Positions 10,441-61,047 of a DNA stretch of 64,000 nucleotides are shown here, one piece after another. A model generated the notes under the pieces. That model ran no database searches. It was not told where the DNA came from and saw only the letters and a list, made by a program, of their open reading frames with translations. Origin of the DNA: Euprymna scolopes (lineage: Eukaryota); NCBI GenBank assembly GCA_053919585.1, contig CM132795.1; one strand, written 5' to 3'. The translations under genes were made by a program, and so were the position numbers. The stretch's first letter is position 1. Each line of letters opens with the position of its first letter.

Positions 10441-10456
10441 TGAGGAACCTTATTCG

Positions 10457-11420
10457 TGTGTGAGAGAAAGTAAGTTCCCTATAGACTCCTAAACGGCTGT
10501 GGCAATTTGTTTTCTTTCACACAGATGTACATTATATCACTGGCAGTGTTGTTTTTATCAGAATGTGACAGAGCTTTATTATGTGAGAAATCCAAGGCGG
10601 TTTCCACTTACCTTGCTGGTTCCATTTGTTTAGTTGGTAGGATTGATAATAACATTTTGATACTAATAATGTTTGGCTAATCAAACTATGTGTTCCGAGA
10701 GATGGTAGTGGGTTATTGTTTTGAGATTTTGTCGACGCGGATGTGAACCCGATGTTTCAAAGTTGCACCATGTAAGAAACTTTTGATGAAAAATTACTTA
10801 ATTAATATCCACACGTGATTTTACCAAATTGGTCAATTAGGGTGAATTCAATTTTGACGCTACCAAGGTGGATTGGCTGAATAAAACCCAGACGTCGTCA
10901 AACTCACTCCGTTACCATACTATAAGGTGTGCAGGAATGAGTTTTGGCAGTTGAATTGATTTTTTTCTGTGCGAACTGTTCACACGACTGTAAAACTGCG
11001 TTATTAAAAAAGGAAAATTGCATATATTTTTCATTTAATTTTACTATATAGTAGCAAATATTGTATTCGTGAGTTTTTTAATGATTTATCTTTATAAAAA
11101 TGAGTATTTACGATTGGAATTTATCATATTCGTTGCATACGGAATTCGTGACTTAAATATAAAACGAACGCCGTCTATGTGAGTTGATTTCTTTCAGGAG
11201 ACAGCAAGCAGGTAAAAGCGGTCAAATCCAACGCTGGTCCAAACTGTCGTCTGTGGCACTCATATTTTCCTGGAAACTTTTAGTTGTTCTCTTTGTTTGT
11301 TTCTTTCCTCCTATTTCATCAGCCCCTGTCATCGTATAGGCAATCAAGGCCACGCTACTGACCTTTGTTGGGTGTTCCGAAATTGAAACCCTTAGGACTT
11401 CGGAGTCTTCACTTGTTACA
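10457..11420 (+). mobile_element. Putative 5' LTR (copy A) of a decayed LTR retroelement
   Basis: Colinear with 59115-60611 (e.g. TTCCATTTGTTT, GGATGTGAACCCGA, TAAAACTGCGTTA, AAATATAAAACGAACGCC, TTGATTTCTTTCAGGAGACAGCAA, TTAGGACT). Begins TGTGTGAGAGAAAGTAAGT, ends GTTACA and is followed by a PBS-like sequence. Confidence 0.6.
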
Positions 11421-11676
11421 TTTTGTGCCATGACCAGAAATCACCCTGAGTTGAGAACAATCATGAACATTAGTCACATTTGGTGACCGTCACGATCACG
11501 CAGGATTTTATCTCTGTTAGACAATCACGAACTTTGGTCACTTTTAGTTGCCGTCACGCAGAATTCTGACCCTGTTACATCTATTAGAGCACATCAGTTT
11601 GATCCTGTTATAGTTGGTGTCAGTAACGCAAGATTTCACGTCTGGAGATTGTGTCAACCCACAGTGCTGGGTGAGT
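11415..11676 (+). promoter_or_regulatory. Tandem array of five LTR-end + primer-binding-site-like cassettes, followed by a GTGAGT splice-donor-like motif
   Basis: GTTACA-tt-TTGTGCCATGACCAGAAATC (11423); GTCACA-tt-TGGTGACCGTCACG (11481); GTCACT-tt-TAGTTGCCGTCACGCAGAATTC (11545); GTTACA-TCTATTAGAGCACATCAGTTTGATCC (11580); GTTATA-gt-TGGTGTCAG (11615); G|GTGAGT at 11671. Confidence 0.55.

Positions 11677-11868: not shown

Positions 11869-11870
<2 letters not shown>

Positions 11871-11937
<67 letters not shown>
11871..11937. repeat. (AT)n microsatellite
   Basis: Directly visible; the Helitron 3' end abuts it. Confidence 0.95.
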
Positions 11938-11938
<1 letters not shown>

Positions 11939-12725
11939 TAGCAGTTCAGCCCGGGTTTGCTCGGACCCTGTGTATTGTTCATAACTTTATGTGCATATGA
12001 ATATATATATATTATATATTTGGAATCATGTCCAGGAAACCTACATCTAAAATTTCAAGTGTTTAGACCAAAAATTGACGGAGGAGTTTGCAGAGGTCAA
12101 CTTTTCCAACTTTGACCTCTTGGCAGCCAAATTTTCGCCCAAAAACTAATTTAAAACCTTGCTGCATGTTTGAAACCACTTTATGTAAAATTTCAAATGT
12201 TAAGACCCAAAACTGGCTGAATAGTTTGCTAGAGACCGCAAAGCTAAAATCTTTTGAACTGTGACCTCTTGACAGCCAAATTTTCGACCTATAACCGATT
12301 AAAAACCTTGCCCTATGTCTGAATACACTTTATGTAAAATTTCAAATGTTTAGACCCAAAATTGGCTGGGTAATTTGGTAGAGACCGCAGAGGTCAAATT
12401 TTTTAAAACTTTGACTCCAATTTTGACCCCTTAACATTAATTGTTTTGGGCTCAAATCAAGTTAAAATGTTTGATCCATTTCCAAGTAACCTGCCTCTAA
12501 ATATTTAAGTGTTTAGACCCAAAATTGGCGAAGGAGTTTGGTAGAGTTTTGACCTCTTGACAAATTTAAGGCCAAAATCTGATTTAAAAGATTTCCCAAA
12601 TCTCAATACCCCTTATGTAAAATCTGTAGTCTGTAGACTGAAAATTGACAGAGTAGTTTGGTAGTGAAATGTACACACACATACACACACATATACTCGC
12701 ACACAGACAATTTCACTTTTATAGA
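11938..12725 (-). mobile_element. Non-autonomous Helitron with an internal tandem array of ~120-160-bp units
   Basis: Minus strand starts TCTATAAAAGTGAAA (12725) followed by a (TG)-rich tract, and ends with the hairpin CCGAG-CAAA-CCCGG then CTAG|T (11941-11938). The unit AAAATTTCAAGTGTTTAGACCCAAAATTGGC...GTTTGGTAGAG recurs at ~12049, 12187, 12336, 12498 and 12618. Confidence 0.8.
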
Positions 12726-14218
12726 AAAATGTTTGATGCCTATAAACTACCGAATGTAGTGCCACGGTGTCTAACACACTCTACAGCATGGCCGAGTTTT
12801 GATTTGGCCATAAGCGTAGAGATACAAAGAAATGCATTCCCAGAATTCCCTTTCTAGATCGATCTTTTTCTGCACGGACTGTTATGAGGTGAGCACGCAT
12901 ATTTCTTTCTCTCCGTAAATGGGGGGAGCGCCCCTCCCTCAATACTAGTTAGGGTATGTTAGTTAGTTTTGAAAAGTCTATTGCTTATGTTTAATTGTAA
13001 AAATTAATTTTAATTTGTATATTGTATTGTAATATATTTTTTGTAAAACAAATAGTTAAGATTATGCGATATATAATACAATTGTGTCGCGTGTCGTTTT
13101 TTGTGTCTGACATAAATACCTTCATTGAAGAACGAGGTGGCCCTGAGAAAAAGTAAGATTCCAACCCGAATGCCACCAAAGGTCAAGTCGTTTCCTGGGA
13201 GAAGAAGGATCCACACAGCCACATCGAACATCGTAGGTATGCTTTTCTTCTTACAGACTCTAACGACTGGCCCATCGTCACATCATCATGGAACCGTGTC
13301 TAAGACGATTAGTGTAACAGTCTCATGCCAGTGACCGGCTGATCGGGTTATATAAGCTGTGTTTAAAGAAAGAAGATTAGTGTTTGTAATTACAATTTTT
13401 TAAGCCCGAGTCGTGCTTTAAAAAAAGGAAAGAGTGCCGAATTTAACGTGTAATGGCTGTTGTTAATCAGTAATTGAATAAATTGAAAATGAGTGCTTAG
13501 GCGGGAACAAAAGTTGTCGATCCAAGAGAGTCGGATGGATAGTTGCACGCGGTCAGTGAGAGACATTGTTTTGGGTGCGTATGAATCTGCGGGTGGATTG
13601 GTATCACGATTTACCGAGCGGAAATTAAAAAAGCAGTCTCGATTGTCCTGGGAGTAGCTGCGGTCATCACGAAAGAAAGAGCACTCTGGTAAGAGGATCA
13701 CGGTCAGGAGGATGTTCAAACTCGAAAAGCGAGCGAGTGAAGTAAGCTCGGTGAAAGGTGAAAGACCCATTCAACCTCCATTAGCAGATGCGCTAGGACA
13801 AGCGTTATTGGACGGAGACATTAGGGCAGATGTCGCTAGATTTTGACTTGGCCCCAGACAATGTTGTGGAAGGTCGCCAACGTGCAAAAATGTCACGACC
13901 GATAATGGTCAATAAAATCCCGCTGCGCCCGATGTCGAAACCAGACGAAAACTGGGAGGAAAAGTCATGGAGCAGTCCGGAATGTTGTCACTTTAGCCAC
14001 GAATCTAAGTGGTGTACTGACGCGGCAGATTGCCGACAGGGGATTAAAAAGTAGGAGTACATAATGCCCCACGATCCCCCAAATGGCAAGGTTTGGAGAA
14101 TCGAGCCTGCCCTTGCCCAACGATGGGGATATTGATACTGATGGTCATTGGTTGCAAGAGAAGGGGCGAGAATCAGTGAAACCACCTGTAAAAGTCTGTT
14201 GATGTTTATTTGTGTTTG

Positions 14219-17200
14219 ACGATAATTTGAAGGCCTTTAAACTGAATGCTTCTGATTTATGTTTATGCTTGAGATTATTTTATTCTTAAGGATAAATTGA
14301 AAGTCTTGGAACTGATTGTTTCTGTTTTTTTGAAAAAAAAATGTCGTGTGTGCTTTGATACTATTTTATTTTTAACGATAAATTGAAAGTCTTGGAACTG
14401 ATTGTTTCTGGGGGGGGGTTAAATGTTGTCGTGTGTGCTTTGATACTATTTTATTCTTAACCATAAATTGAAAGTCTTGGAACTGATTGTTTCTGTTTTT
14501 TGAAAAAAAATGTTGTCGTGTGTGCTTTGATACTATTTTATTTTTAACGATAAATTGAAAGTCTTGGAACTGATTGTTTCTGTTTCTTGAAAAAACAATG
14601 TTGTCGTGTGTGCTTTGATACTATTTTATTTTTAAGGATATATTGAAAGTCTTGGAACTGATTGTTTCCGTTTTTTGAAAAAACATGTTGTCGTGTGTGC
14701 TTTGATACTATTTTATTTTTAACGATAAATTGAAAGTCTTGGAACTGATTGTTTCTGTTTCTTGAAAAAAAATGTTGTCGTGTGTGCTTTGATACTATTT
14801 TATTTTTCACGATATATTGAAAGTCTTGGAACTGATTGTTTCTGTTTTTTGAAAAAAAAATGTTGTCGTGTGTGCTTTGATACTATTTTATTTTTAACGA
14901 TAAATTGAAAGTCTTGGAACTGATTGTTTCCGTTTTTTGAAAAAACATGTTGTCGTGTGTGCTTGGATACTATTTTATTTTTAACGATAAATTGAAAGTC
15001 TTGGAACTGATTGTTTCCGTTTTTTTTAAAAACATGTTGTCGTGTGTGCTTTGATACTATTTTATTTTTAACGATAAATTGAAAGTCTTGGAACTGATTG
15101 TTTCAGTTTTTTGAAAAAAATCTTGTCGTGTGTGCTTTGATACTATTTTATTTTTAACGATAAATTGAAAGTCTTGGAACTGATTGTTTCTGTTTTTTGA
15201 AAAGAAATGTTGTCGTGTGTGCTTTGATACTATTTTATTTTTAACGATAAATTGAAAGTCTTGGAACTGATTGTTTCTGTTTTTTGAAAAAAAATGTTGT
15301 CGTGTGTGCTTTGATACTATTTTATTTTTAACGATATATTGAAAGTCTTGGAACTGATTGTTTCTGTTTTTTGAAAAAAAAATGTTGTCGTGTGTGCTTT
15401 GATACGATTTTATTTTTAACGATATATTGAAAGTCTTGGAACTGATTGTTTCTGTTTTTTGAAAAAAATGTTTTCGTGTGTGCTTTGATACTATTTTATT
15501 TTTAACGATAAATGTAAAGTCTTGGAACTGATTGTTTCTGGGGTTTTTTTAAATGTTGTAATGTGTGCTTTGATACTATTTTATTCTTAACCATAAATTG
15601 CAAGTCTTGGAACTGATTGTTTCTGTTTTTTGAAAAAAAATGTTGTCGTGTGTGCTTTGATACTATTTTATTTTTAACGATATATTGAAAGTCTTGGAAC
15701 TGATTGTTTCTGTTTTTTGAAAAAAAATGTTGTCGTGTGTGCTTTGATACTATTTTATTTTTAACGATAAATTGAAAGTCTTGGAACTGATTGTTTCTGT
15801 TTCTTGAAATACAATGTTGTCGTGTGTGCTTTGATACTATTTTATTTTTAACGATATATTAAAAGTCTTGGAACTGATTGTTTCCGTTTTTGAAAAAACA
15901 TGTTGTCGTGTGTGCTTTGATACTATTTTATTTTTAACGATAAATTGAAAGTCTTGGAACTGATTGTTTCTGTTTCTTGAAAAAAAATGTTGTCGTGTGT
16001 GCTTTGATACTATTTTATTTTTAACGATAAATTGAAAGTCTTGGAACTGATTGTTTCTGTTTTTTGAAAAAAAAATGTTGTCGTGTGTGCTTTGATACTA
16101 TTTTATTTTTAACGATAAATTGAAAGTCTTGGAACTGATTGTTTCCGTTTTTTGAAAAAAACATGTTGTCGTGTGTGCTTTGATACTATTTTATTTTTAA
16201 CGATAAATTGAAAGTCTTCGAACTGATTGTTTCCGTTTTTTTAAAAAACATGTTGTCGTGTGTGCTTTGATACTATTTTATTTTTAACGATAAATTGAAA
16301 GTCTTGGAACTGATTGTTTCTGTTTTTTGAAAAAAAAATGTTGTCGTGTGTGCTTTGATACTATTTTATTTTTAACGATAAATGCAAAGTCTTGGAAATG
16401 ATTGTTTCTGTTTTTTGAAAAGAAATGTTGTCGTGTGTGCTTTGATACTATTTTATTTTTAACGATAAATTGAAAGTCCTGGAACTGATTGTTTCAGTTT
16501 TTTGAAAAAAATCTTGTCGTGTGTGCTTTGATACTATTTTATTTTTAACGATAAATTGAAAGTCTTGGAACTGATTGTTTCTGTTTTTTGAAAAGAAATG
16601 TTGTCGTGTGTGCTTTGATACTATTTTATTTTTAACGATAAATTGAAAGTCTTGGAACTGATTGTTTCTGTTTTTTGAAAAAAAATGTTGTCGTGTGTGC
16701 TTTGATACTATTTTATTTTTAACGATATATTGAAAGTCTTGGAACTGATTGTTTCTGTTTTTTGAAAAAAAAATGTTGTCGTGTGTGCTTTGATACGATT
16801 TTATTTTTAACGATATATTGAAAGTCTTGGAACTGATTGTTTCTGTTTTTTGAAAAAAATGTTGTCGTGTGTGCTTTGATACTATTTTATTTTTAACGAT
16901 AAATGTAAAGTCTTGGAACTGATTGTTTCTGGGGTTTTTTTAAATGTTGTCGTGTGTGCTTTGATACTATTTTATTCTTAACCATAAATTGAAAGTCTTG
17001 AAACTGATTGTTTCTGTTTCTTGAAATACAATGTTGTCGTGTGTGCTTTGATACTATTTTATTTTTAACGATATATTAAAAGTCTTGGAACTGATTGTTT
17101 CCGTTTTTGAAAAAACATGTTGTCGTGTGTGCTTTGATACTATTTTATTTTTAACGATAAATTGAAAGTCTTGGAACTGATTGTTTCTGTTTCTTGAAAA

Positions 17201-20200
17201 AAAATGTTGTCGTGTGTGCTTTGATACTATTTTATTTTTAACGATAAATTGAAAGTCTTGGAACTGATTGTTTCTGTTTTTTGAAAAAAAAATGTTGTCG
17301 TGTGTGCTTTGATACTATTTTATTTTTAACGATAAATTGAAAGTCTTGGAACTGATTGTTTCCGTTTTTTGAAAAAACATGTTGTCGTGTGTGCTTTGAT
17401 ACTATTTTATTTTTAACGATAAATTGAAAGTCTTCGAACTGATTGTTTCCGTTTTTTTAAAAAACATGTTGTCGTGTGTGCTTTGATACTATTTTATTTT
17501 TAACGATAAATTGAAAGTCTTGGAACTGATTGTTTCTGTTTTTTGAAAAAAAAATGTTGTCGTGTGTGCTTTGATACTATTTTATTTTTAACGATAAATG
17601 CAAAGTCTTGGAACTGATTGTTTCTGTTTTTTGAAAAGAAATGTTGTCGTGTGTGCTTTGATACTATTTTATTTTTAACGATAAATTGAAAGTCTTGGAA
17701 CTGATTGTTTCTGTTTTTAGAAAAAAAATGTTGTCGTGTGTGCTTTGATACTATTTTATTTTTAACAATATATTGAAAGTCTTGGAACTGATTGTTTCTG
17801 TTTTTTGAAAAAACATGTTTTCGTGTTTGCTTTGATACTATTTTATTTTTAACGATAAATTGAAAGTCTTGAAACTGATTGTTTCTGTTTCTTTAAAAAA
17901 AAAATTGTCGTGTGTGCTTTGTTACTATTTTATTTTTAACGATATATTGAAAGTCTTGGAACTGATTGTTTCTGTTTTTGGAAAAAAAAATGTTGCCGTG
18001 TTTGCTTATATACTATATTATTTTTAACGATAAATTGAAAGTCTTGGAACTGATTGTTTCTTTTTCTTGAATACAAATTTGTCGTGTGTGCTTTGATACT
18101 ATTTTATTTTTAACGATATATTGAAAGTCTTGGAACTGATTGTTTCTGTTTTTTGAAAAAAAAATGTTGTCGTGTTTGCTTTGATACTATTTTATTTTTA
18201 ACTATATATTGAAAGTCTTGGAACTGATTGTTACTGTTTTTTGAAAAAAAAATGTTGTCGTGTGTGCTTTGATACTATTTTATTTTTAACGATAAATTGA
18301 AAGTCTTGGAACTGATTGTTTCTGTTTTTTGAAAAAAAAATGTTGTCGTGTGTGCTTTGATACTATTTTATTTTTAACGATTAATTGAAAGTCTTGGGAC
18401 TGATTGTTTCTGTTTTTTGAACAAAAATGTTGTCGTGTGTGCTTTGATACTATTTTATTTTTAACGATAAATTGAAAGTCTTGGAACTGATTGTTTCTGT
18501 TTTTTGAAAAAAAATGTTGTCGTGTGTGCTTTGATACTATTCTATTTTTAACGATATATTGAAAGTCTTGGAACTGATTGTTTCTGTTTTTTGAAAAAAA
18601 ATGTTGTCGTGTGTGCTTTGATACTATTTTATTTTTAACGATAAATTGAAAGTCTTGGAACTGATTGTTTCTGTTTTTTGAAAAAACATGTTGTCGTGTG
18701 TGCTTTGATACTATTTTATTTTTAACGATATATTGAAAGTCTTGGAACTGATTGTTTCTGTTTTTTGAAAAAAAAATGTTGTCGTGTGTGCTTTGATACG
18801 ATTTTATTTTTAACGATATATTGAAAGTCTTGGAACTGATTGTTTCTGTTTTTTGAAAAAAATGTTGTCGTGTGTGCTTTGATACTATTTTATTTTTAAC
18901 GATAAATTGAAAGTCTTGGAACTGATTGTTTCTGGGTTTTTTTTAAATGTTGTCATGTGTGCTTTGATACTATTTTATTCTTAACCATAAATTGAAAGTC
19001 TTGGAACTGATTGTTTCTGTTTTTTGAAAAAAAATGTTGTCGTGTGTGCTTTGATACTATTTTATTTTTAACGATAAATTGAAAGTCTTGGAACTGATTG
19101 TTTCTGTTTTTTGAAAAAAATGTTGTCGTGTGTGCTTTGATACTATTTTATTTTTAACGATAAATTGAAAGTCTTGGAACTGATTGTTTCTGTTTCTTGA
19201 AAAAAAATGTTGTCGTGTGTGCTTTGATACTATTTTATTTTTAACGATATATTAAAAGTCTTGGAACTGATTGTTTTCGTTTTTTGAAAAAACATGTTGT
19301 CGTGTGTGCTTTGATACTATTTTATTTTTAACGATAAATTGAAAGTCTTGGAACTGATTGTTTCTGTTTCTTGAAAAAAAATGTTGTCGTGTGTGCTTTG
19401 ATACTATTTTATTTTTAACGATAAATTGAAAGTCTTGGAACTGATTGTTTCTGTTTTTTGAAAAAAAAATGTTGTCGTGTGTGCTTTGATACTATTTTAT
19501 TTTTAACGATAAATTGAAAGTCTTGGAACTGATTGTTTCCGTTTTTTGAAAAAACATGTTGTCGTGTGTGCTTTGATACTATTTTATTTTAAACGATAAA
19601 TTGAAAGTCTTCGAGCTGATTGTTTCTGTTTTTTGAAAAAAAAATGTTGTCGTGTGTGCTTTGATACTATTTTATTTTTAACGATAAATGTAAAGTCTTG
19701 GAACTGATTGTTTCTGTTTTTTGAAAAGAAATGTTGTCGTGTGTGCTTTGATATTATTTTATTTTTAACGATTAATTGAAAGTCTTGGAACTGATTGTTT
19801 CTGTTTTTTGAAAAAAAATGTTGTCGTGTGTGCTTTGATACTATTTTATTTTTAACGATATATTGAAAGTCTTGGAACTGATTGTTTCTGTTTTTTGAAA
19901 AAACATGTTGTCATGTGTGCTTTGATACTATTTTATTTTTAACGATATATTGAAAGTCTTGGAACTGATTGTTTCTGTTTTTTGAAAAAACATGTTTTCG
20001 TGTTTGCTTTGATACTATTTTATTTTTAACGATAAATTGAAAGTCTTGAAACTGATTGTTTCTGTTTCTTGAAAAAAAAAATTGTCGTGTGTGCTTTGTT
20101 ACTATTTTATTTATAACGATATATTGAAAGTCTTGGAACTGATTGTTTCTGTTTTTGGAAAAAAAATTTGTCGTGTGTGCTTTGATACTATTTTATTTTT

Positions 20201-23200
20201 AACGATATATTGAAAGTCTTTGAACTGATTGTTTCTGTTTTTTGAAAAAAAAATGTTGTCGTGTTTGCTTATATACTATATTATTTTTAACGATAAATTG
20301 AAAGTCTTGGAACTGATTGTTTCTTTTTCTTGAAAAAAAATTTGTCGTGTGTGCTTTGATACTATTTTATTTTTAACGATATATTGAAAGTCTTGGAACT
20401 GATTGTTTCTGTTTTTTGAAAAAAAAATGTTGTCGTGTTTGCTTTGATACTATTTCATTTTTAACGATATATTGAAAGTCTTGGAACTGATTGTTTCTGT
20501 TTTTTGAAAAAAAATGTTGTCGTGTGTGCTTTGATACTATTTTATTTTTAACGATAAATTGAAAGTCTTTGGACTGATTGTTTCTGTTTTTTGAACAAAA
20601 ATGTTGTCGTGTGTGCTTTGATACTATTTTATTTTTAACGATAAATTGAAAGTCTTGGAACTGATTGTTTCTGTTTTTTGAAAAAAATGTTGTCGTGTGT
20701 GCTTTGATACTATTCTATTTTTAACGATATATTGAAAGTCTTGGAACTGATTGTTTCTGTTTTTTGAAAAAAAATGTTGTCGTGTGTGCTTTGATACTAT
20801 TTTATTTTTAACGATAAATTGAAAGTCTTGGAACTGATTGTTTCTGTTTTTTGAAAAGAAATGTTGTCGTGTGTGCTTTGATACTATTTTATTTTTAACG
20901 ATAAATTGAAAGTCTTGGAACTGATTGTTTCTGTTTTTTGAAAAAAAATGTTGTCGTGTGTGCTTTGATACTATTTTATTTTTAACGATATATTGAAAGT
21001 CTTGGAACTGATTGTTTCTGTTTTTTGAAAAAAAAATGTTGTCGTGTGTGCTTTGATACGATTTTATTTTTAACGATATATTGAAAGTCTTGGAACTGAT
21101 TGTTTCTGTTTTTTGAAAAAAATGTTGTCGTGTGTGCTTTGATACTATTTTATTTTTAACGATAAATTGAAAGTCTTGGAACTGATTGTTTCTGGGTTTT
21201 TTTTAAATGTTGTCGTGTGTGCTTTGATACTATTTTATTTTTAACGATATATTAAAAGTTCTTGGAACTGATTGTTTTCGTTTTTTGAAAAAACATGTTG
21301 TCGTGTGTGCTTTGATACTATTTTATTTTTAACGATAAATTGAAAGTCTTGGAACTGATTGTTTCTGTTTCTTGAAAAAAAATGTTGTCGTGTGTGCTTT
21401 GATACTATTTTATTTTTAACGATAAATTGAAAGTCTTGGAACTGATTGTTTCTGTTTTTTGAAAAAAAAATGTTGTCGTGTGTGCTTTGATACTATTTTA
21501 TTTTTAACGATAAATTGAAAGTCTTGGAACTGATTGTTTCCGTTTTTTGAAAAAACATGTTGTCGTGTGTGCTTTGATACTATTTTATTTTAAACGATAA
21601 ATTGAAAGTCTTCGAGCTGATTGTTTCTGTTTTTTGAAAAAAAAATGTTGTCGTGTGTGCTTTGATACTATTTTATTTTTAACGATAAATGTAAAGTCTT
21701 GGAACTGATTGTTTCTGTTTTTTGAAAAGAAATGTTGTCGTGTGTGCTTTGATATTATTTTATTTTTAACGATAAATTGAAAGTCTTGGAACTGATTGTT
21801 TCTGTTTTTTGAAAAAAAATGTTGTCGTGTGTGCTTTGATACTATTTTATTTTTAACGATAAATTGAAAGTCTTGGAACTGATTGTTTCTGTTTTTAGAA
21901 AAAAAATGTTGTCGTGTGTGCTTTGATACTATTTTATTTTTAACGATATATTGAAAGTCTTGGAACTGATTGTTTCTGTTTTTTGAAAAAACATGTTGTC
22001 ATGTGTGCTTTGATACTATTTTATTTTTAACGATATATTGAAAGTCTTGGAACTGATTGTTTCTGTTTTTTGAAAAAACATGTTTTCGTGTTTGCTTTGA
22101 TACTATTTTATTTTTAACGATAAATTGAAAGTCTTGAAACTGATTGTTTCTGTTTCTTGAAAATAAAAATTGTCGTGCGTGCTTTGTTACTATTTTATTT
22201 ATAACGATATATTGAAAGTCTTGGAACTGATTGTTTCTGTTTTTGGAAAAAAAATTTGTCGTGTGTGCTTTGATACTATTTTATTTTTAACGATAAATTG
22301 AAAGTCTTGGAACTGATTGTTTCTGTTTTTTGAAAAAAAAATGTTGTCGTGTTTGCTTATATACTATATTATTTTTAACGATAAATTGAAAGTCTTGGAA
22401 CTGATTGTTTCTTTTTCTTGAAAAAAAATTTGTCGTGTGTGCTTTGATACTATTTTATTTTTAACGATATATTGAAAGTCTTGGAACTGATTGTTTCTGT
22501 TTTTTGAAAAAAAAATGTTGTCGTGTTTGCTTTGATACTATTTCATTTTTAACGATATATTGAAAGTCTTGGAACTGATTGTTTCTGTTTTTTGAAAAAA
22601 AATGTTGTCGTGTGTGCTTTGATACTATTTTATTTTTAACGATAAATTGAAAGTCTTGGAACTGATTGTTTCTGTTTTTTGAAAAAAAAATGTTGTCGTG
22701 TGTGCTTTGATACTATTTTATTTTTAACGATTAATTGAAAGTCTTGGGACTGATTGTTTCTGTTTTTTGAACAAAAATGTTGTCGTGTGTGCTTTGATAC
22801 TATTTTATTTTTAACGATAAATTGAAAGTCTTGGAACTGATTGTTTCTGTTTTTTGAAAAAAATGTTGTCGTGTGTGCTTTGATACTATTCTATTTTTAA
22901 CGATATATTGAAAGTCTTGGAACTGATTGTTTCTGTTTTTTGAAAAAAAATGTTGTCGTGTGTGCTTTGATACTATTTTATTTTTAACGATAAATTGAAA
23001 GTCTTGGAACTGATTGTTTCTGTTTTTTGAAAAGAAATGTTGTCGTGTGTGCTTTGATACTATTTTATTTTTAACGATAAATTGAAAGTCTTGGAACTGA
23101 TTGTTTCTGTTTTTGAAAAAAAATGTTGTCGTGTGTGCTTTGATACTATTTTATTTTTAACGATATATTGAAAGTCTTGGAACTGATTGTTTCTGTTTTT

Positions 23201-26200
23201 TGAAAAAAAAATGTTGTCGTGTGTGCTTTGATACGATTTTATTTTTAACGATATATTGAAAGTCTTGGAACTGATTGTTTCTGTTTTTTGAAAAAAATGT
23301 TGTCGTGTGTGCTTTGATACTATTTTATTTTTAACGATAAATGTAAAGTCTTGGAACTGATTGTTTCTGGGGTTTTTTTAAATGTTGTCGTGTGTGCTTT
23401 GATACTATTTTATTCTTAACCATAAATTGAAAGTCTTGGAACTGATTGTTTCTGTTTTTTGAAAAAAAATGTTGTCGTGTGTGCTTTGATACTATTTTAT
23501 TTTTAACGATATATTGAAAGTCTTGGAACTGATTGTTTCTGTTTTTTGAAAAAAATGTTGTCGTGTGTGCTTTGATACTATTTTATTTTTAACGATAAAT
23601 TGAAAGTCTTGGAACTGATTGTTTCTGTTTCTTGAAATACAATGTTGTCGTGTGTGCTTTGATACTATTTTATTTTTAACGATATATTAAAAGTCTTGGA
23701 ACTGATTGTTTCCGTTTTTGAAAAAACATGTTGTCGTGTGTGCTTTGATACTATTTTATTTTTAACGATAAATTGAAAGTCTTGGAACTGATTGTTTCTG
23801 TTTCTTGAAAAAAAATGTTGTCGTGTGTGCTTTGATACTATTTTATTTTTAACGATAAATTGAAAGTCTTGGAACTGATTGTTTCTGTTTTTTGAAAAAA
23901 AAATGTTGTCGTGTGTGCTTTGATACTATTTTATTTTTAACGATAAATTGAAAGTCTTGGAACTGATTGTTTCCGTTTTTTGAAAAAACATGTTGTCGTG
24001 TGTGCTTTGATACTATTTTATTTTTAACGATAAATTGAAAGTCTTCGAACTGATTGTTTCCGTTTTTTTAAAAAACATGTTGTCGTGTGTGCTTTGATAC
24101 TATTTTATTTTTAACGATTAATTGAAAGTCTTGGAACTGATTGTTTCTGTGTTTTGAAAAAAAATGTTGTCGTGTGTGCTTTGATACTATTTTATTTTTA
24201 ACGATAAATGCAAAGTCTTGGAAATGATTGTTTCTGTTTTTTGAAAAGAAATGTTGTCGTGTGTGCTTTGATACTATTTTATTTTTAACGATAAATTGAA
24301 AGTCTTGGAACTGATTGTTTCTGTTTTTAGAAAAAAAATGTTGTCGTGTGTGCTTTGATACTATTTTATTTTTAACGATATATTGAAAGTCTTGGAACTG
24401 ATTGTTTCTGTTTTTTGAAAAAACATGTTGTCATGTGTGCTTTGATACTATTTTATTTTTAACAATATATTGAAAGTCTTGGAACTGATTGTTTCTGTTT
24501 TTTGAAAAAACATGTTTTCGTGTTTGCTTTGATACTATTTTATTTTTAACGATAAATTGAAAGTCTTGAAACTGATTGTTTCTGTTTCTTTAAAAAAAAA
24601 AATTGTCGTGTGTGCTTTGTTACTATTTTATTTTTAACGATATATTGAAAGTCTTGGAACTGATTGTTTCTGTTTTTGGAAAAAAAAATGTTGCCGTGTT
24701 TGCTTATATACTATATTATTTTTAACGATAAATTGAAAGTCTTGGAACTGATTGTTTCTTTTTCTTGAAAACAAATTTGTCGTGTGTGCTTTGATACTAT
24801 TTTATTTTTAACGATATATTGAAAGTCTTGGAACTGATTGTTTCTGTTTTTTGAAAAGAAAATGTTGTCGTGTTTGCTTTGATACTATTTTATTTTTAAC
24901 GATATATTGAAAGTCTTGGAACTGATTGTTTCTGTTTTTTGAAAAAAAAATGTTGTCGTGTGTGCTTTGATACTATTTTATTTTTAACGATAAATTGAAA
25001 GTCTTGGAACTGATTGTTTCTGTTTTTTGAAAAAAAAATGTTGTCGTGTGTGCTTTGATACTATTTTATTTTTAACGATTAATTGAAAGTCTTGGGACTG
25101 ATTGTTTCTGTTTTTTGAACAAAAATGTTGTCGTGTGTGCTTTGATACTATTTTATTTTTAACGATAAATTGAAAGTCTTGGAACTGATTGTTTCTGTTT
25201 TTTGAAAAAAATGTTGTCGTGTGTGCTTTGATACTATTCTATTTTTAACGATATATTGAAAGTCTTGGAACTGATTGTTTCTGTTTTTTGAAAAAAAATG
25301 TTGTCGTGTGTGCTTTGATACTATTTTATTTTTAACGATAAATTGAAAGTCTTGGAACTGATTGTTTCTGTTTTTTGAAAAAACATGTTGTCGTGTGTGC
25401 TTTGATACTATTTTATTTTTAACGATATATTGAAAGTCTTGGAACTGATTGTTTCTGTTTTTTGAAAAAAAATGTTGTCGTGTGTGCTTTGATACGATTT
25501 TATTTTTAACGATATATTGAAAGTCTTGGAACTGATTGTTTCTGTTTTTTGAAAAAAATGTTGTCGTGTGTGCTTTGATACTATTTTATTTTTAACGATA
25601 AATTGAAAGTCTTGGAACTGATTGTTTCTGGGGTTTTTTTAAATGTTGTCGTGTGTGCTTTGATACTATTTTATTCTTAACCATAAATTGAAAGTCTTGG
25701 AACTGATTGTTTCTGTTTTTTGAAAAAAAATGTTGTCGTGTGTGCTTTGATACTATTTATTTTTAACGATAAATTGAAAGTCTTGGAACTGATTGTTTCT
25801 GTTTTTTGAAAAAAAATGTTGTCGTGTGTGCTTTGATACTATTTTATTTTTAACGATAAATTGAAAGTCTTGGAACTGATTGTTTCTGTTTCTTGAAAAA
25901 AAATGTTGTCGTGTGTGCTTTGATACTATTTTATTTTTAACGATATATTGAAAGTCTTGGAACTGATTGTTTTCGTTTTTTGAATAAACATGTTGTCGTG
26001 TGTGCTTTGATACTATTTTATTTTTAACGATAAATTGAAAGTCTTGGAACTGATTGTTTCTGTTTCTTGAAAAAAAATGTTGTCGTGTGTGCTTTGATAC
26101 TATTTTATTTTTAACGATAAATTGAAAGTCTTGGAACTGATTGTTTCTGTTTTTTGAAAAAAAAATGTTGTCGTGTGTGCTTTGATACTATTTTATTTTT

Positions 26201-29200
26201 AACGATAAATTGAAAGTCTTGGAACTGATTGTTTCCGTTTTTTGAAAAAACATGTTGTCGTGTGTGCTTTGATACTATTTTATTTTAAACGATAAATTGA
26301 AAGTCTTCGAGCTGATTGTTTCTGTTTTTTGAAAAAAAAATGTTGTCGTGTGTGCTTTGATACTATTTTATTTTTAACGATAAATGTAAAGTCTTGGAAC
26401 TGATTGTTTCTGTTTTTTGAAAAGAAATGTTGTCGTGTGTGCTTTGATATTTTTTTATTTTTAACGATTAATTGAAAGTCTTGGAACTGATTGTTTCTGT
26501 TTTTTGAAAAAAAATGTTGTCGTGTGTGCTTTGATACTATTTTATTTTTAACGATAAATTGAAAGTCTTGGAACTGATTGTTTCTGTTTTTAGAAAAAAA
26601 ATGTTGTCGTGTGTGCTTTGATACTATTTTATTTGTAACGATATATTGAAAGTCTTGGAACTGATTGTTTCTGTTTTTTGAAAAAACATGTTGTCATGTG
26701 TGCTTTGATACTATTTTATTTTTAACGATATATTGAAAGTCTTGGAACTGATTGTTTCTGTTTTTTGAAAAAACATGTTTTCGTGTTTGCTTTGATACTA
26801 TTTTATTTTTAACGATAAATTGAAAGTCTTGAAACTGATTGTTTCTGTTTCTTGAAAAAAAAAAATTGTCGTGTGTGCTTTGTTACTATTTTATTTATAA
26901 CGATATATTGAAAGTCTTGGAACTGATTGTTTCTGTTTTTGGAAAAAAAATTTATCGTGTGTGCTTTGATACTATTTTATTTTTAACGATATATTGAAAG
27001 TCTTGGAACTGATTGTTTCTGTTTTTTGAAAAAAAAATGTTGTCGTGTTTGCTTATATACTATATTATTTTTAACGATAAATTGAAAGTCTTGGAACTGA
27101 TTGTTTTTTTTTCTTGAAAAAAAATTTGTCGTGTGTGCTTTGATACTATTTTATTTTTAACGATATATTGAAAGTCTTGGAACTGATTGTTTCTGTTTTT
27201 TGAAAAAAAAATGTTGTCGTGTTTGCTTTGATACTATTTCATTTTTAACGATATATTGAAAGTCTTGGAACTGATTGTTTCTGTTTTTTGAAAAAAAATG
27301 TTGTCGTGTGTGCTTTGATACTATTTTATTTTTAACGATAAATTGAAAGTCTTGGAACTGATTGTTTCTGTTTTTTGAAAAAAAAATGTTGTCGTGTGTG
27401 CTTTGATACTATTTTATTTTTAACGATTAATTGAAAGTCTTGGGACTGATTGTTTCTGTTTTTTGAACAAAAATGTTGTCGTGTGTGCTTTGATACTATT
27501 TTATTTTTAACGATAAATTGAAAGTCTTGGAACTGATTGTTTCTGTTTTTTGAAAAAAATGTTGTCGTGTGTGCTTTGATACTATTCTATTTTTAACGAT
27601 ATATTGAAAGTCTTGGAACTGATTGTTTCTGTTTTTTGAAAAAAAATGTTGTCGTGTGTGCTTTGATACTATTTTATTTTTAACGATAAATTGAAAGTCT
27701 TGGAACTGATTGTTTCTGTTTTTTGAAAAGAAATGTTGTCGTGTGTGCTTTGATACTATTTTATTTTTAACGATAAATTGAAAGTCTTGGAACTGATTGT
27801 TTCTGTTTTTTGAAAAAAAATGTTGTCGTGTGTGCTTTGATACTATTTTATTTTTAACGATATATTGAAAGTCTTGGAACTGATTGTTTCTGTTTTTTGA
27901 AAAAAAAATGTTGTCGTGTGTGCTTTGATACGATTTTATTTTTAACGATATATTGAAAGTCTTGGAACTGATTGTTTCTGTTTTTTGAAAAAAATGTTGT
28001 CGTGTGTGCTTTGATACTATTTTATTTTTAACGATAAATGTAAAGTCTTGGAACTGATTGTTTCTGGGTTTTTTTTAAATGTTGTCGTGTGTGCTTTGAT
28101 ACTATTTTATTCTTAACCATAAATTGAAAGTCTTGGAACTGATTGTTTCTGTTTTTTGAAAAAAAATGTTGTCGTGTGTGCTTTGATACTATTTTATTTT
28201 TAACGATATATTGAAAGTCTTGGAACTGATTGTTTCTGTTTTTTGAAAAAAAATGTTGTCGTGTGTGCTTTGATACTATTTTATTTTTAACGATATATTG
28301 AAAGTCTTGGAACTGATTGTTTCTGTTTTTTGAAAAAACATGTTGTCATGTGTGCTTTGATACTATTTTATTTTTAACAATATATTGAAAGTCTTGGAAC
28401 TGATTGTTTCTGTTTTTTGAAAAAACATGTTTTCGTGTTTGCTTTGATACTATTTTATTTTTAACGATAAATTGAAAGTCTTGAAACTGATTGTTTCTGT
28501 TTCTTTAAAAAAAAAAATTGTCGTGTGTGCTTTGTTACTATTTTATTTTTAACGATATATTGAAAGTCTTGGAACTGATTGTTTCTGTTTTTGGAAAAAA
28601 AAATGTTGCCGTGTTTGCTTATATACTATATTATTTTTAACGATAAATTGAAAGTCTTGGAACTGATTGTTTCTTTTTCTTGAAAACAAATTTGTCGTGT
28701 GTGCTTTGATACTATTTTATTTTTAACGATATATTGAAAGTCTTGGAACTGATTGTTTCTGTTTTTTGAAAAAAAAATGTTGTCGTGTTTGCTTTGATAC
28801 TATTTTATTTTTAACGATATATTGAAAGTCTTGGAACTGATTGTTACTGTTTTTTGAAAAAAAAATGTTGTCGTGTGTGCTTTGATACTATTTTATTTTT
28901 AACGATAAATTGAAAGTCTTGGAACTGATTGTTTCTGTTTTTTGAAAAAACATGTTGTCGTGTGTGCTTTGATACTATTTTATTTTTAACGATTAATTGA
29001 AAGTCTTGGGACTGATTGTTTCTGTTTTTTGAACAAAAATGTTGTCGTGTGTGCTTTGATACTATTTTATTTTTAACGATAAATTGAAAGTCTTGGAACT
29101 GATTGTTTCTGTTTTTTGAAAAAAAATGTTGTCGTGTGTGCTTTGATACTATTCTATTTTTAAAGATATATTGAAAGTCTTGGAACTGATTGTTTCTGTT

Positions 29201-32200
29201 TTTTGAAAAAAAATGTTGTCGTGTGTGCTTTGATACTATTTTATTTTTAACGATAAATTGAAAGTCTTGGAACTGATTGTTTCTGTGTTTTGAAAAAACA
29301 TGTTGTCGTGTGTGCTTTGATACTATTTTATTTTTAACGATATATTGAAAGTCTTGGAACTGATTGTTTCTGTTTTTTGAAAAAAAAATGTTGTCGTGTG
29401 TGCTTTGATACGATTTTATTTTTAACGATATATTGAAAGTCTTGGAACTGATTGTTTCTGTTTTTTGAAAAAAATGTTGTCGTGTGTGCTTTGATACTAT
29501 TTTATTTTTAACGATAAATTGAAAGTCTTGGAACTGATTGTTTCTGTTTTTTGAAAACAAAATGTTTCGTGTGTGCTTTGATACTATTTTATTTTTACGA
29601 TATATTGAAAGTCTTGGAACTGATTGTTTCTGTTTCTTGAAAAAACATGTTGTCGTGTGTGCTTTGATACTATTTTATTTTTAACGATATATTCAAAGTC
29701 TTGGAACTGATTGTTTCTGTTTTTTGAAAAAAAAATGTTGTCGTGTGTGCTTTGATACTATTTTATTTTTAACGATATATTGAAAGTCTTGTAACTAATT
29801 GTTTCTGTTATTTGAAAAAAAATGTTGTCGTGTGTGCTTTGATATTATTTTATTTTTAACGATAAATTGAAAGTCTTGGAACTGATTGTTTCTGTTTTTT
29901 GAAAAAACATGTTGTCGTGTGTGGTTTGATGCTATTTTATTTTTAACGATAAATTGAAAGTCTTGGAACTTATTATTTCTGTTTTTTGAAAAAAAATTTT
30001 GTCGTGTGTGCTTTGATACTACTTTATTTTTAACGATAAATTGAAAGTCTTGGAACTGATTGTTTCTGTTTTTTGAAAAAAAAATGTTGTCGTCTGTGCT
30101 TTGATACTATTTTATTTTTAACGATAAATTGCAAGTCTTGGAACTGATTGTTTCTGTTTTTTGAAAAAAAATGTTGTCGTGTGTGTTTTGATACTATTTT
30201 ATTTTTAACGATATATTGAAAGTCTTGGAACTGATTGTTTCTGTTTTTTGAAAAAACATGTTGTCATGTGTGCTTTGATACTATTTTATTTTTAACGATA
30301 TATTGAAAGTCTTGGAACTGATTGTTTCTGTTTTTTGAAAAAACATGTTGTCGTGTGTGCTTTGATACTATTTTATTTTTAACGATAAATTGAAAGTCTT
30401 GGAACTGATTGTTTCTGTTTTTTGAAAAAAAAATTTGTCGTGTGTGCTTTGATACTATTTTATTTTTAACGATATATTCAAAGTCTTGGAACTGATTGTT
30501 TCTGTTTCTTGAAAAAAAATGTTGTCGTGTGTGCTTTGTTACTATTTTATTTTAAACGATATATTGAAAGTCTTGGAACTGATTGTTTCTGTTTTTGGAA
30601 AAAAAATGTTGTCGTGTTTGCTTATATACTATTTTATTTTTAACGATAAATTGAAAGTCTTGGAACTGATTGTTTCTGTTTCTTGAAAAAAAATGTTATC
30701 GTGTGTGCTTTGATACTATTTTATTTTTAAGGATATATTGTAAGACTTGGAACTGATTGTTTCTGTTTTTTGAAAAAAATATGTTGTCGCGTTTGCTTTG
30801 ATACTATTTCATTTTTTACGATATATTGAAAGTCTTGGAACTGATTGTTTCTGTTTCTTGAAAAAAAAAGGTTGTCGCGTGTGCTTTGATACTATTTTAT
30901 TTTTAACGATATATTGAAAGTCTTGGAACTGATTGTTTCTGTTTTTTGAAAAAAAATGTTGTCGTGTGTGCTTTGATACTATTTTATTTTTAACGATAAA
31001 TTGAAAGTCTTGGAACTGATTGTTTCTGTTTTTTGAAAAAAAATGTTGTCGTGTGTGCTTTGATACTATTTTATTTTTAACGATAAATTGAAAGTCTTGG
31101 AACTGATTGTTTCTGTTTTTTGAAAAAAATGTTGTCGTGTGTGCTTTGATACTATTTTATTTTTAACGATAAATTGAAAGTCTTGGAACTGATTGTTTCT
31201 GTTTTTTGAAAAAACATGTTGTCGTGTGTGCTTTGATACTATTTTATTTTAACGATAAATTCAAAGTCTTGGAACTGATTGTTTCTGTTTTTTGAAAAAA
31301 AATGTCGTGTGTGCGTTGATACTATTTTATTTTTAACGATATATTGAAAGTCTTGGAACTGATTGTTTCTGTTTCTTGAAAAAAAAATTTGTCGTGTGTG
31401 CTTTGATACTATTTTATTTTTAACGATATATTGAAAGTCTTGGAACTGATTGTTTCTGTTTTTTGAAAAAAAAATGTTGTCGTGTGTGCTTTGATACTAT
31501 TTTATTTTGAACGATATATTGAAAGTCTTGGAACTGATTGTTTCTGTTTTTTGAAAAAAACTGTTGCGTGTGTGCTGTGATACTATTTTTTTTTTAACGA
31601 TAAATTGAAAGTCTTGGAACTGATTGTTTCTGTTTTTTGAAAAAAAATGTTGTCGTGTGTGCTTTGATACTATTTTTTTAACGATATATTTAAAGTCTTG
31701 GAACTAATTGTTTCTGTTTTTTGAAAAAATATGTTGTCGTGTGTGCTTTGATACTATTTTATTTTCAACGATATATTGAAAGTCTTGGAACTGATTGTTT
31801 CTGTTTTTTGAAAAAAAAATGTTGTCGTGTGTGCTTTGATACTATTTTATTTTTAACGATATATTGAAAGTCTTGGAACTGATGTTTTCTGTTCTTGAAA
31901 AAACATGTTGTCGTGTGTGCTTTGTTACTATTTTATTTTTAACGATATATTGAAAGTCTTGGAACTGATTGTTTCTGTTTTTTGAAAAAAAAATGTTGTC
32001 GTGTGTGCTTTGATACTATTTTATTTTTAACGATAAATTGAAAGTCTTGGAACTGATTGTTTCTGTTTCTTGAAAAAACATGTTGTCGTGTGTGCTTTGA
32101 TACTATTTTATTTTTAACGATATATTGAAAGTCTTGGAACTGATTGTTTCTGTTTTTTGAAAAAAAATGTTGTCGTGTGTGCTTTGATACTATTTTATTT

Positions 32201-60611: not shown

Positions 60612-61047
60612 ATCGAAAAAATACATTGAAAGAAGGAGCGGGCGATTTTGACTAAAGTTACCACTTTGTACAGCCTAACATCAAAAGTGCATCTGAGAAG
60701 TTTTGTTACTACACAAGTAGAAAGGCTTAGGATATACAATCAAGAGCATGTTCCTTGATATAACAGGAGCAGGTCTCAAATGAATGTTTCTGTTTAGAGC
60801 ACAATTTAACCATGATACTTGATTTTTGCATTTTAAACTTTAGTTCACATAAAAATAATTTTATAAAATCGACAGTTGGTTACCTACAGTGCTATGTTGT
60901 ACACTACAATGTATTGTGGGATACGTAACTATGGGGAGAGATATGAAGGAAGAGTCGAAAAATTGTCGATTTTACCGATTTTGATGGCAATAAAATATAG
61001 AAGGGTGAAATATTCGTTGATCCTCGTTCATTAGGTCTCCCTGCTTG

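What the first reader, a model, noticed from the sequence alone, without database searches (positions are those of the whole stretch)
11415..11676. Tandem 'primer-binding-site library': five LTR-end + tRNA-complement cassettes behind one LTR
Seen: directly after the putative LTR end (GTTACA, 11415-11420), the pattern 'GT(T/C)ACA-like hexamer, 0-2 nt, PBS-like sequence' recurs five times, with PBS-like starts at 11423, 11481, 11545, 11580 and 11615, and is followed by a G|GTGAGT donor-like motif. By-eye comparison with remembered invertebrate tRNA 3' ends: unit 1 TTGTGCCATGACCAGAAATC-ACCCTGAGTT matches the tRNA-His complement TGGTGCCGTGACCAGGATTCGAACCTGGGTT at 16/20, and the match continues through the T arm, beyond a normal 18-nt PBS. 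Units 2 and 3 (TGGTGACCGTCACG..CAGGATT) resemble Arg(TCG)/Ser-type PBSs. Unit 4 (AGAGCA...GTTTGATCC) resembles the initiator-Met complement, including its distinctive T-loop. Unit 5 begins TGGTGTCAG, like a Leu-type PBS. Established: LTR elements normally carry one PBS 1-3 nt after the 5' LTR. Inference: a non-autonomous element may have accumulated alternative priming cassettes, letting it borrow RT/tRNA primers from several autonomous partners or recording successive priming events. I do not know of a description of this arrangement. The alternative is divergent duplication of a single PBS, since units 2, 3 and 5 resemble each other.
Basis: partly seen in the sequence, partly recalled or inferred. 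Interest (0 to 1): 0.8.

Follow-up and report, generated by a model that had tools for sequence, protein, structure and literature searches.

The report
Tandem antisense tRNA-His copies behind LTR
Right after the 5' LTR of an old, non-coding LTR retrotransposon sit five decayed cassettes that all descend from the reverse complement of one host tRNA (tRNA-His), in relatives nearly the whole tRNA, so this is a fossil of reverse transcriptase copying its primer and then duplicating it, not a library of sites for different tRNAs.

Summary
The pattern is real. The LTR ends at 11420 (GTTACA), as five independent right ends in relatives confirm. Five "CA-hexamer + 2 nt + TGG-like" cassettes follow, at 11423, 11481, 11545, 11582 and 11615.

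The multi-tRNA reading fails. I fetched host tRNA-His(GTG) genes and compared their reverse complement plus CCA. Cassettes 1-3 and 5 of the window each match it better than shuffles. Across about 26 family copies, cassettes 2, 3 and 4 match it (mean z 2.5-4.2). The initiator-like and Thr controls do not.

- Cassettes 2, 3 and 5 share derived changes, so they are duplicates of an already diverged cassette.
- The Leu-like start of cassette 5 is a minority variant (7 of 26 copies; most read TGGCG).
- No multi-copy host tRNA ends in ...ACGGTCA.

Some relatives carry a near full-length antisense tRNA-His (positions 1-73, 65-73% identical) directly after the LTR. Other LTR families here also extend their His primer-binding site (PBS) to 38-45 nt.

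Best reading: plus-strand synthesis read through the primer tRNA, then cassettes were duplicated, possibly at a GTTAC shared by the LTR end and the tRNA copy. This window copy is decayed and silent in three polyA RNA runs. It is a new variant of a known kind.

The parts
10500..11420 (+). 5' LTR of an old LTR retrotransposon. The start is approximate and the first ~50-70 nt are diverged. It ends in GTTACA.
   Evidence: Aligns to 59471-60404 at 77-80% identity. Family LTRs start TGTGAC.... The terminus is verified at five right ends in relatives.
11421..11422 (+). 2-nt spacer (TT) between the LTR and the PBS
   Evidence: Direct reading. The same CA+TT+TGG junction is found 437 times in the genome, against 0 for the control pattern.
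11423..11468 (+). Cassette 1. A decayed tRNA-His PBS running through the T arm (11423-11452 = reverse-complement positions 1-31). It is followed by 16 nt that resemble the complement of the tRNA 5' end, so the middle of the tRNA copy is deleted.
   Evidence: Local alignment score 32 against shuffle mean 15.0, sd 3.1, p about 0.002. Relatives have the undeleted copy.
11469..11532 (+). Cassette 2. Hexamer GTCACA (11473-11478), TT, then a diverged tRNA-His reverse-complement copy from 11481, ending in the complement of the tRNA 5' end.
   Evidence: p about 0.016 in the window. Family level: mean z 3.5, 17 of 24 copies at p<0.05. Related to cassettes 3 and 5.
11533..11581 (+). Cassette 3. Hexamer GTCACT (11537-11542), TT, then a tRNA-His reverse-complement copy of about positions 1-33 from 11545. 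It ends in GTTACA (11574-11579) plus TC.
   Evidence: p about 0.001 in the window. Family level: mean z 4.2, 23 of 26 copies.
11582..11614 (+). Cassette 4. A short, strongly decayed tRNA-His reverse-complement copy (about positions 1-28). It ends in GTTATA (11607-11612) plus GT.
   Evidence: In the window alone it is not significant (p 0.056 for His, 0.11 for the initiator-like control). Across the family, His gives mean z 2.45 with 14 of 28 copies at p<0.05; the initiator-like control gives z 0.5 with 3 of 28.
11615..11645 (+). Cassette 5. A copy of the cassette-2/3 type and the most diverged from the tRNA.
   Evidence: Against cassette 3, mean z 3.1; against cassette 2, z 4.2. Against tRNA-His, weak at family level (z 0.9) and p about 0.022 in the window. 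The start reads TGGCG in 14 of 26 copies and TGGTG in 7.
11670..11676 (+). GGTGAGT, a splice-donor-like motif at the end of the leader
   Evidence: Direct reading. Exact in 11 of 29 copies at the homologous place. No use was seen in RNA reads.
11870..13350 (.). Later insertion into this copy: an (AT)n run, a 149-bp tandem repeat and other repeats
   Evidence: Family homology stops near 11866 and resumes at 13350. Tandem repeats.
13352..14300 (+). Internal region of the element, with no coding domains found in relatives
   Evidence: Collinear with L035 positions 2231-3241. ORF and Pfam scans of relatives were negative.
14300..52100 (+). 87-bp satellite grown from the element's own internal tandem repeat
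   Evidence: About 420 copies. Monomers align to L035 3130-3241 and L040 2691-2828. Not related to the tRNA cassettes.
59451..60625 (+). 3' LTR of the same element. It starts TGTGACCC. Its end is diverged and approximate.

Best explanation
The window holds one old, non-coding LTR retrotransposon that primes reverse transcription with tRNA-His. Its leader begins with a tRNA-His primer-binding site that does not stop after 18 nt. It continues as a reverse-complement copy of the primer tRNA. In the window this runs through the T arm, with a piece of the tRNA 5' end. In several relatives it covers positions 1-73 of 75.

Four further, more decayed copies of the same cassette follow in tandem. Each is preceded by a CA-ending hexamer and 2 nt, like the LTR terminus. 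All five cassettes descend from tRNA-His. Cassettes 2, 3 and 5 are duplicates of an already diverged cassette.

Likely origin (inferred). During plus-strand strong-stop synthesis the reverse transcriptase read past the usual stop at m1A58 and copied the primer tRNA, which is still joined to the minus strand. This fixed 'U5 end - TT - antisense tRNA' in the element. The cassette was then duplicated by one of two routes. Either the growing strand re-aligned at the pentamer GTTAC, which occurs both at the LTR terminus and at reverse-complement positions 29-33 of tRNA-His, predicting a 36-nt unit (observed 37 and 33 nt). Or ordinary slippage or unequal exchange at the DNA level did it.

Cassettes 3-5 were already in the ancestor of the sampled copies. 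The number and form of the LTR-proximal cassettes still vary among copies.
For: Shown:
- Two LTRs with TG...CA ends.
- Host tRNA-His(GTG) genes called by ARAGORN. Their 3' 22-mer occurs 2416 times at up to 3 mismatches, against 0 for the control.
- The genes are followed by TTGA or TGTC, not CCA, so the TGG of the cassettes reflects mature tRNA.
- Strict test: 23 leader matches against 0 in 60 control segments.
- Per-cassette tests in the window and across the family.
- Cassettes 2, 3 and 5 are mutually related, z 3-5.6.
- Near full-length antisense tRNA in L029 (56 of 77 columns), L024, L015, L009, L081 and L098.
- Cassettes 3, 4 and 5 are found at collinear places in 26-28 of 29 copies.
- LTR-proximal cassettes vary in number. 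The last 11-20 nt of the LTR plus TT recur in the leader in 7 of 17 copies, against 0.6 expected.
- Other, unrelated LTR families in this genome also extend the His PBS to 38 nt (L083, L095) or 45 nt (L087, L088, L092). Others stop at 18-19 nt (L082, L091, L094, L099).

Established knowledge: unmodified primer tRNA is copied to its 5' end in plus-strand strong-stop synthesis, m1A58 normally stops it, and tRNA-His is a known primer (review PMC13191261, read).
Against: - The read-through step and the GTTAC re-alignment are inferences from anatomy. No intermediate was observed.
- The review says fully copied products are not active templates in HIV-1, so fixation must have been a rare event.
- Cassette 5 matches the tRNA only weakly, and cassette 4 is not significant in the window alone.
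- My idea that the cassette-4 segment was the anticodon arm of cassette 3's tRNA copy failed.
- Rfam and ARAGORN do not call any of the antisense copies a tRNA, which fits decay but gives no independent support.
- The panel of other host tRNAs I could test was small: Thr/Lys-type, an initiator-like 3' end, and two pattern searches.
Confidence: 0.75

Rival explanations
1. Multi-tRNA priming library. Each cassette is a PBS for a different tRNA (His, Arg/Ser, initiator Met, Leu), letting a non-autonomous element use several partners.
For: The first 10 nt of cassettes 2 and 3 (TGGTGACCGT) would pair with a tRNA ending ...ACGGTCA-CCA. One singleton genomic site with a T-arm-like context and that ending exists (C1:183959233). 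I could not fetch it.
Against: - The initiator-like 3' end does not match cassette 4 (z 0.5, 3 of 28 copies), while tRNA-His does (z 2.45, 14 of 28).
- Cassette 5 starts TGGCG in most copies. The Leu-like TGGTG is a minority form (7 of 26) and may be a CpG-decay change.
- A correctly spaced pattern for a T loop plus ...GACGGTCA shows no enrichment (77 hits against 164 for the control). The looser pattern gives 6 unrelated singletons, in a genome where real tRNA genes are highly multi-copy.
- The fetched candidates are not tRNAs by ARAGORN; for L073 and L074 Rfam agrees.
- Cassettes 2, 3 and 5 share derived states and also match tRNA-His through the T arm.
Confidence: 0.04
2. No reverse-transcription origin. 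An antisense tRNA-His-derived SINE or tRNA pseudogene landed next to the PBS, or a piece of a tRNA-His gene array was captured, and ordinary minisatellite slippage made the array.
For: The genome is full of tRNA-like dispersed repeats (506,012 first-look candidates; SINE-like hits) and tRNA-His arrays. Copy number varies among copies as in any minisatellite.
Against: - The antisense copy starts exactly at the PBS position, 2 nt after the LTR's CA.
- It includes the complement of CCA, which the genes do not encode.
- Independent LTR families with different LTR ends show the same contiguous extension from position 1 of the PBS.
- Cassette spacing is 33-88 nt, not the roughly 284 nt of the gene arrays.
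Confidence: 0.1
3. Functional array. The long complement is selected as an extended primer-template interaction, and the downstream cassettes (CA hexamer + 2 nt + TGG...) serve as alternative tRNA-His initiation sites, each supplying an integrase-ready CA end. This adds a function to the main explanation and can be true together with it.
For: Each cassette keeps a CA-type hexamer and a 2-nt spacer before TGG across the family. In locus L084, the LTR end, one cassette and a second LTR-terminus-like ...GGGTTACA are followed at once by an unrelated repeat, as expected for a right end made by priming at the second cassette. Extended tRNA-template pairing is known for Ty1 (PMC3681743).
Against: - Five of the six right ends examined (all but L084) stop at the first GTTACA with no extra cassette. 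The window's own 3' LTR end is too diverged to score.
- Downstream cassettes are too diverged from tRNA-His in their first 18 nt to pair well.
- L084 is a single case whose context I could not fetch. A search for it by internal sequence did not list it.
Confidence: 0.15

Closest known systems
Canonical tRNA primer-binding site of LTR retrotransposons and retroviruses
   Same: It starts 2 nt after the LTR's terminal CA, is complementary to the 3' end of a mature tRNA including CCA, and uses tRNA-His, a known primer.
   Different: The complementarity runs on for 31 nt in the window and up to 73 nt in relatives, instead of about 18. The cassette is repeated in tandem.
Read-through plus-strand strong-stop products (the 'P1' product when the primer lacks m1A58; review PMC13191261)
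   Same: The product predicted there, U5 followed by a complement of the whole tRNA, is exactly the anatomy seen after this LTR.
   Different: Those products are known from in vitro work and methyltransferase-mutant cells and are described as non-productive. Here the product appears fixed in a transposing family, and partly in other families.
Extended primer-template interactions (Ty1 extended PBS, cited in PMC3681743; from my own knowledge also the Ty3 bipartite PBS and the HIV-1 and RSV contacts outside the PBS)
   Same: Leader sequence complementary to tRNA parts beyond the acceptor end.
   Different: Those are short, separate boxes kept by selection. Here it is one contiguous antisense copy that decays like neutral sequence.
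Tandem repeats in LTR-element leaders and minisatellite-like repeats inside transposable elements
   Same: A short-period array in the 5' untranslated leader, with copy number varying among family members.
   Different: The repeated unit is the priming cassette itself: LTR-terminus-like hexamer, spacer and tRNA complement.
Strong-stop-DNA model for tRNA-derived SINEs (Ohshima and Okada, squid SINE; recalled from memory, not retrieved)
   Same: Read on the other strand, each cassette is 'tRNA with CCA + a few nt of U5 complement', the layout of a minus-strand strong-stop molecule.
   Different: The cassettes sit inside an LTR element and are not dispersed as independent SINE copies. No link to any SINE was tested.

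Membership tests
LTR retrotransposon | Two long terminal repeats in direct orientation | tested here: met
   Window 10523-11307 against 59471-60404 at 77-80% identity. L035 has LTRs about 5.5 kb apart at 77-85% identity.
LTR retrotransposon | LTR termini TG...CA | tested here: met
   Starts TGTGAC in L032, L033, L034, L036 and the window's 3' LTR. Ends GTTACA or close variants (GTTTTACA, GTTATA) at five right ends.
LTR retrotransposon | PBS complementary to a host tRNA 3' end within a few nt of the 5' LTR | tested here: met
   tRNA-His. 14/18 in the window; about 17/18 in L098 and 18/18 in L081, read from the printed junctions.
LTR retrotransposon | Polypurine tract just upstream of the 3' LTR | tested here: inconclusive
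   Only short purine runs (AAGGG, AAAGGGGG) 7-40 nt upstream in the window, L035 and L040.
LTR retrotransposon | Target-site duplication | tested here: inconclusive
   Flanks were printed for L035 and L033. The LTR starts are too decayed or truncated to read a duplication.
Autonomous LTR retrotransposon (Ty3/gypsy, BEL/Pao, copia, retrovirus-like) | gag/pol domains (protease, reverse transcriptase, RNase H, integrase) | tested here: not met
   No ORF over 110 aa in L035 or L040. Ten sense ORFs gave no Pfam hit above noise. So the element is non-autonomous or fully decayed, and the superfamily is unassigned.
tRNA gene or tRNA-derived SINE | Cloverleaf recognised by tRNA models; sense orientation with its own promoter and tail | tested here: not met
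   ARAGORN finds 0 in the window and family loci. Rfam gives no tRNA hit at E up to 1 in six loci with the best copies. The copies are antisense and start at the PBS position.
   One singleton candidate remains unexamined.

The most novel reading that the evidence does not exclude
In this genome, reverse transcriptases of several unrelated LTR families repeatedly read through their tRNA-His primer, perhaps because tRNA-His here carries a weak or absent m1A58 stop. Whole or partial primer copies then become fixed in element leaders. There they can be re-copied into tandem 'LTR-end + PBS' cassettes, and these may occasionally act as new initiation sites (locus L084). That would be a natural, heritable record of plus-strand strong-stop read-through. 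It would also be a route by which tRNA modules enter retroelements.
Probability: 0.3. Interest if true: 0.7.

Novelty: new variant of a known kind. Interest (0 to 1): 0.5.

Why it matters
Textbook reverse transcription says the plus-strand strong-stop DNA ends 18 nt into the primer tRNA, and that read-through products are dead ends. Here the read-through product (LTR end, spacer, antisense copy of nearly the whole tRNA including CCA) appears to have been fixed. It was inherited by a family with at least 84-161 candidate copies and duplicated in tandem. Partial extensions recur in other LTR families that use the same tRNA.

This gives two testable links:
- between a tRNA modification state (m1A58 on tRNA-His of this species) and the architecture of its retroelements;
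- between primer copying and the origin of tRNA-derived modules.

It also corrects an attractive but wrong reading (a multi-tRNA library) that by-eye comparison of T-arm-sharing tRNA ends invites.

Tried and rejected
- The 87-bp satellite is not derived from the tRNA cassette, despite a similar unit length.
- The cassette-4 segment is not the anticodon arm of cassette 3's tRNA copy: mean z -0.55 over 26 copies. It is instead a short separate His-type cassette.
- The initiator-Met reading of cassette 4 fails. The host sites I used for the initiator-like 3' end are not called tRNAs by ARAGORN or Rfam. The control is therefore only a 3'-end sequence.
- My first loose pattern for a tRNA ending ...ACGGTCA was mis-spaced by one N. 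Its hits were not tRNAs. The corrected pattern gave 6 singletons.
- Rfam on the six best loci gave no tRNA hit.
- Pfam on ten sense ORFs gave nothing.
- RNA reads: three polyA RNA-seq runs gave 1 read on 10400-12000 and no joint at GGTGAGT. The contigs of run X2 may be DNA. So there is no evidence of expression of this copy.
- A G(-1) signature of mature tRNA-His at the cassette ends was ambiguous.
- Literature searches for natural multiple or tandem PBS, or for whole-tRNA copies behind an LTR, found nothing relevant. The library is incomplete, so this is weak evidence of novelty.
L084 was not among the 40 scored hits of an internal-region search.

Full report
**Context.** The window comes from a 5.9-Gb eukaryotic assembly with very large tRNA gene arrays. 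The stretch 11380-11700 belongs to a dispersed repeat family. Forty scored copies are 67-85% identical to it, and an internal probe finds 161 candidates. Extending ten copies showed that homology starts sharply at TGTGAC.... In L035 the first roughly 1.1 kb recurs 5.5 kb downstream at 77-85% identity. That makes it an LTR element with LTRs of about 1.15 kb and an internal part of about 4.3 kb.

In the window, the 5' LTR (about 10500-11420) pairs with a 3' LTR at 59451 to about 60625. Between them, the element's own internal 87-bp repeat has grown into a satellite of about 38 kb. A later insertion occupies 11870-13350. No ORF longer than 110 aa and no Pfam domain was found in two full relatives.

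**Observation.** Five independent right ends in relatives stop at GTTACA or close variants (GTTTTACA, GTTATA) and continue into unrelated flank. After 11420 come TT and then five cassettes, each preceded by a CA-type hexamer and two bases. The starts are 11423, 11481, 11545, 11582 and 11615. GGTGAGT follows at 11670. A repeat finder already groups 11473-11494, 11537-11558 and 11607-11628 as one family.

**Which tRNA.** A 22-mer for the tRNA-His 3' end, first guessed from the element and from memory, occurs 2416 times in the host at up to 3 mismatches. The control pattern occurs 0 times. Two fetched places contain three tRNA-His(GTG) genes by ARAGORN. Their flanks do not encode CCA. I used the reverse complement of one gene plus CCA (75 nt) as the probe.

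In the window, four cassettes beat composition-matched shuffles:
- cassette 1: p about 0.002;
- cassette 3: p about 0.001;
- cassette 2: p about 0.016;
- cassette 5: p about 0.022.

An initiator-like 3' end and tRNA-Thr do not match any cassette.

Across the family:
- At a threshold above the 99th percentile of shuffles, 23 matches fall in the leaders of 20 of 30 copies. None falls in 60 control segments from the LTRs and interiors of the same loci.
- With a 33-nt probe, leaders hold 2.1 matches on average, against 0.09 in controls. Twenty-one of 29 copies have two or more.
- Cassettes anchored at homologous places give mean z of 3.5 (cassette 2), 4.2 (cassette 3), 2.45 (cassette 4) and 0.9 (cassette 5) for tRNA-His. 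The initiator-like control gives at most 0.5 and Thr at most 0.75.
- Cassettes 2, 3 and 5 resemble each other (z 3.1-5.6) and share changes away from the tRNA. They are therefore copies of an already diverged cassette.

**The other tRNA assignments.**
- The Leu-like start of cassette 5 (TGGTG) is the minority state. Fourteen of 26 copies read TGGCG, so the window's T may be a CpG-decay change.
- A correctly spaced search for a T loop followed by the acceptor end that cassettes 2 and 3 would need gave 77 hits, against 164 for the control.
- The two T-loop-like hits are not tRNAs.
- A looser pattern was first mis-spaced by me. When corrected, it gave six unrelated singletons. One of these (C1:183959233) could be a single-copy tRNA whose last 10 nt would pair with cassettes 2 and 3. 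I could not fetch it.

**More than a PBS.** In several relatives the first cassette is a near full-length antisense tRNA-His:
- L029: positions 1-73, 56 of 77 columns identical;
- L024, L015, L009, L081 and L098: 65-70% identical.

This is about the same decay as the family as a whole. The window's cassette 1 has the first 31 positions and then 16 nt resembling the complement of the tRNA 5' end, so the middle is deleted.

Twenty junctions fetched with the pattern 'CA-end, TT, His PBS' (437 genomic matches, control 0) belong to several families with unrelated LTR ends:
- some stop at 18-19 nt (L082, L091, L094, L099);
- others run on to 38 nt (L083, L095) or 45 nt (L087, L088, L092).

**Variation.** Cassettes 3, 4 and 5 are found at collinear positions in 26-28 of 29 copies, so they predate the spread of the sampled copies. 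The LTR-proximal part differs among copies. There are one to three cassettes, and in 7 of 17 copies the last 11-20 nt of the LTR plus TT recur 26-105 nt downstream (0.6 expected).

**Mechanism.** It is established that plus-strand strong-stop synthesis copies the primer tRNA still attached to the minus strand. It normally stops at m1A58, and it copies an unmodified tRNA to its 5' end (PMC13191261). 'U5 end - TT - antisense whole tRNA with CCA complement' is exactly that read-through product.

I infer that such a product was once fixed and then duplicated. The pentamer GTTAC occurs both at the LTR terminus and at positions 29-33 of the antisense tRNA, 36 nt apart. Re-alignment of a growing strand, or DNA slippage, between the two would make 36-nt units of 'A, 2 nt, positions 1-28, GTTAC'. 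Cassettes 3 and 4 are 37 and 33 nt long and end in GTTACA and GTTATA. The longer cassettes 1 and 2 end at the complement of the tRNA 5' end, followed by a 12-nt LTR-terminus-like spacer. This fits a jump from the end of the tRNA template back to the U5 end. None of these steps was observed.

**Function.** Whether the downstream cassettes ever primed is open. Five of the six right ends examined (all but L084) show no extra cassette; the window's own 3' LTR end is too diverged to score. In L084, however, the LTR end, one cassette and a second terminus-like ...GGGTTACA abut an unrelated repeat. I could not obtain its context. The window copy shows no expression in three polyA RNA runs.

**Comparison and verdict.** The closest known things are:
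- the canonical PBS;
- the experimentally known read-through strong-stop product;
- the extended but discontinuous tRNA contacts of Ty1 (PMC3681743);
- ordinary leader minisatellites.

I found no description of a natural element with a whole antisense primer copy and tandem priming cassettes. The searchable library is partial, so this is weak evidence.

The finding is real. The multi-tRNA interpretation is wrong. What remains is an unusual variant of a known kind.

Noticed in passing
window 14300-52100: About 38 kb of 87-bp satellite (about 420 monomers) lies inside a single LTR element. It derives from that element's short internal tandem repeat (L035 3130-3241, L040 2691-2828), so this is a satellite born from a transposable-element internal repeat.
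   Followed up: partly
L084 (G000:C18:112572793-112573135, reverse strand): LTR end, TT, one His cassette and a second LTR-terminus-like ...GGGTTACA are followed immediately by an unrelated repeat. This could be a right end made by priming at a second cassette, or a leader broken by an insertion.
   Followed up: partly
L083, L095, L087, L088, L092 (fetched): LTR families with unrelated LTR ends carry tRNA-His PBSs that continue contiguously to 38-45 nt of the tRNA complement. L087, L088 and L092 also hold extra fragments resembling the anticodon-stem region 74-236 nt downstream.
   Followed up: partly
G000:C11:1.68-2.16 Mb (L041-L070) and G000:C40:48.03-48.05 Mb: Huge tRNA gene arrays. ARAGORN made 627 tRNA calls, mostly Thr(TGT) variants, in 30 overlapping 3-kb loci. 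tRNA-His genes lie in an array with a period of about 284 bp.
   Followed up: no
L075, L076 and G000:C22:2.69-2.91 Mb: A cluster of initiator-Met-like sequences lacks a normal anticodon arm and is not called tRNA. A dispersed 3' fragment ends in CCA (L076), suggesting a retro-copied tRNA 3' piece.
   Followed up: no
L009 432-600 (- strand): U2 snRNA-like sequence, 32 bits, E 0.0025, below the gathering score. Probably a pseudogene.
   Followed up: no
window 8345-8651 and 2660-3094: A near-perfect 149-nt inverted repeat with a 9-nt loop, and a second pair of 65-72-nt inverted repeats about 300 nt apart.
   Followed up: no
window 12108-12404: 149-bp tandem repeat (2 copies, 83% matches) inside the insertion that interrupts the element. 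It is shared with L010 and L028.
   Followed up: no
window 9114-9413 and 9548-9732: Runs of N (gaps or masked). I left them untouched.
   Followed up: no
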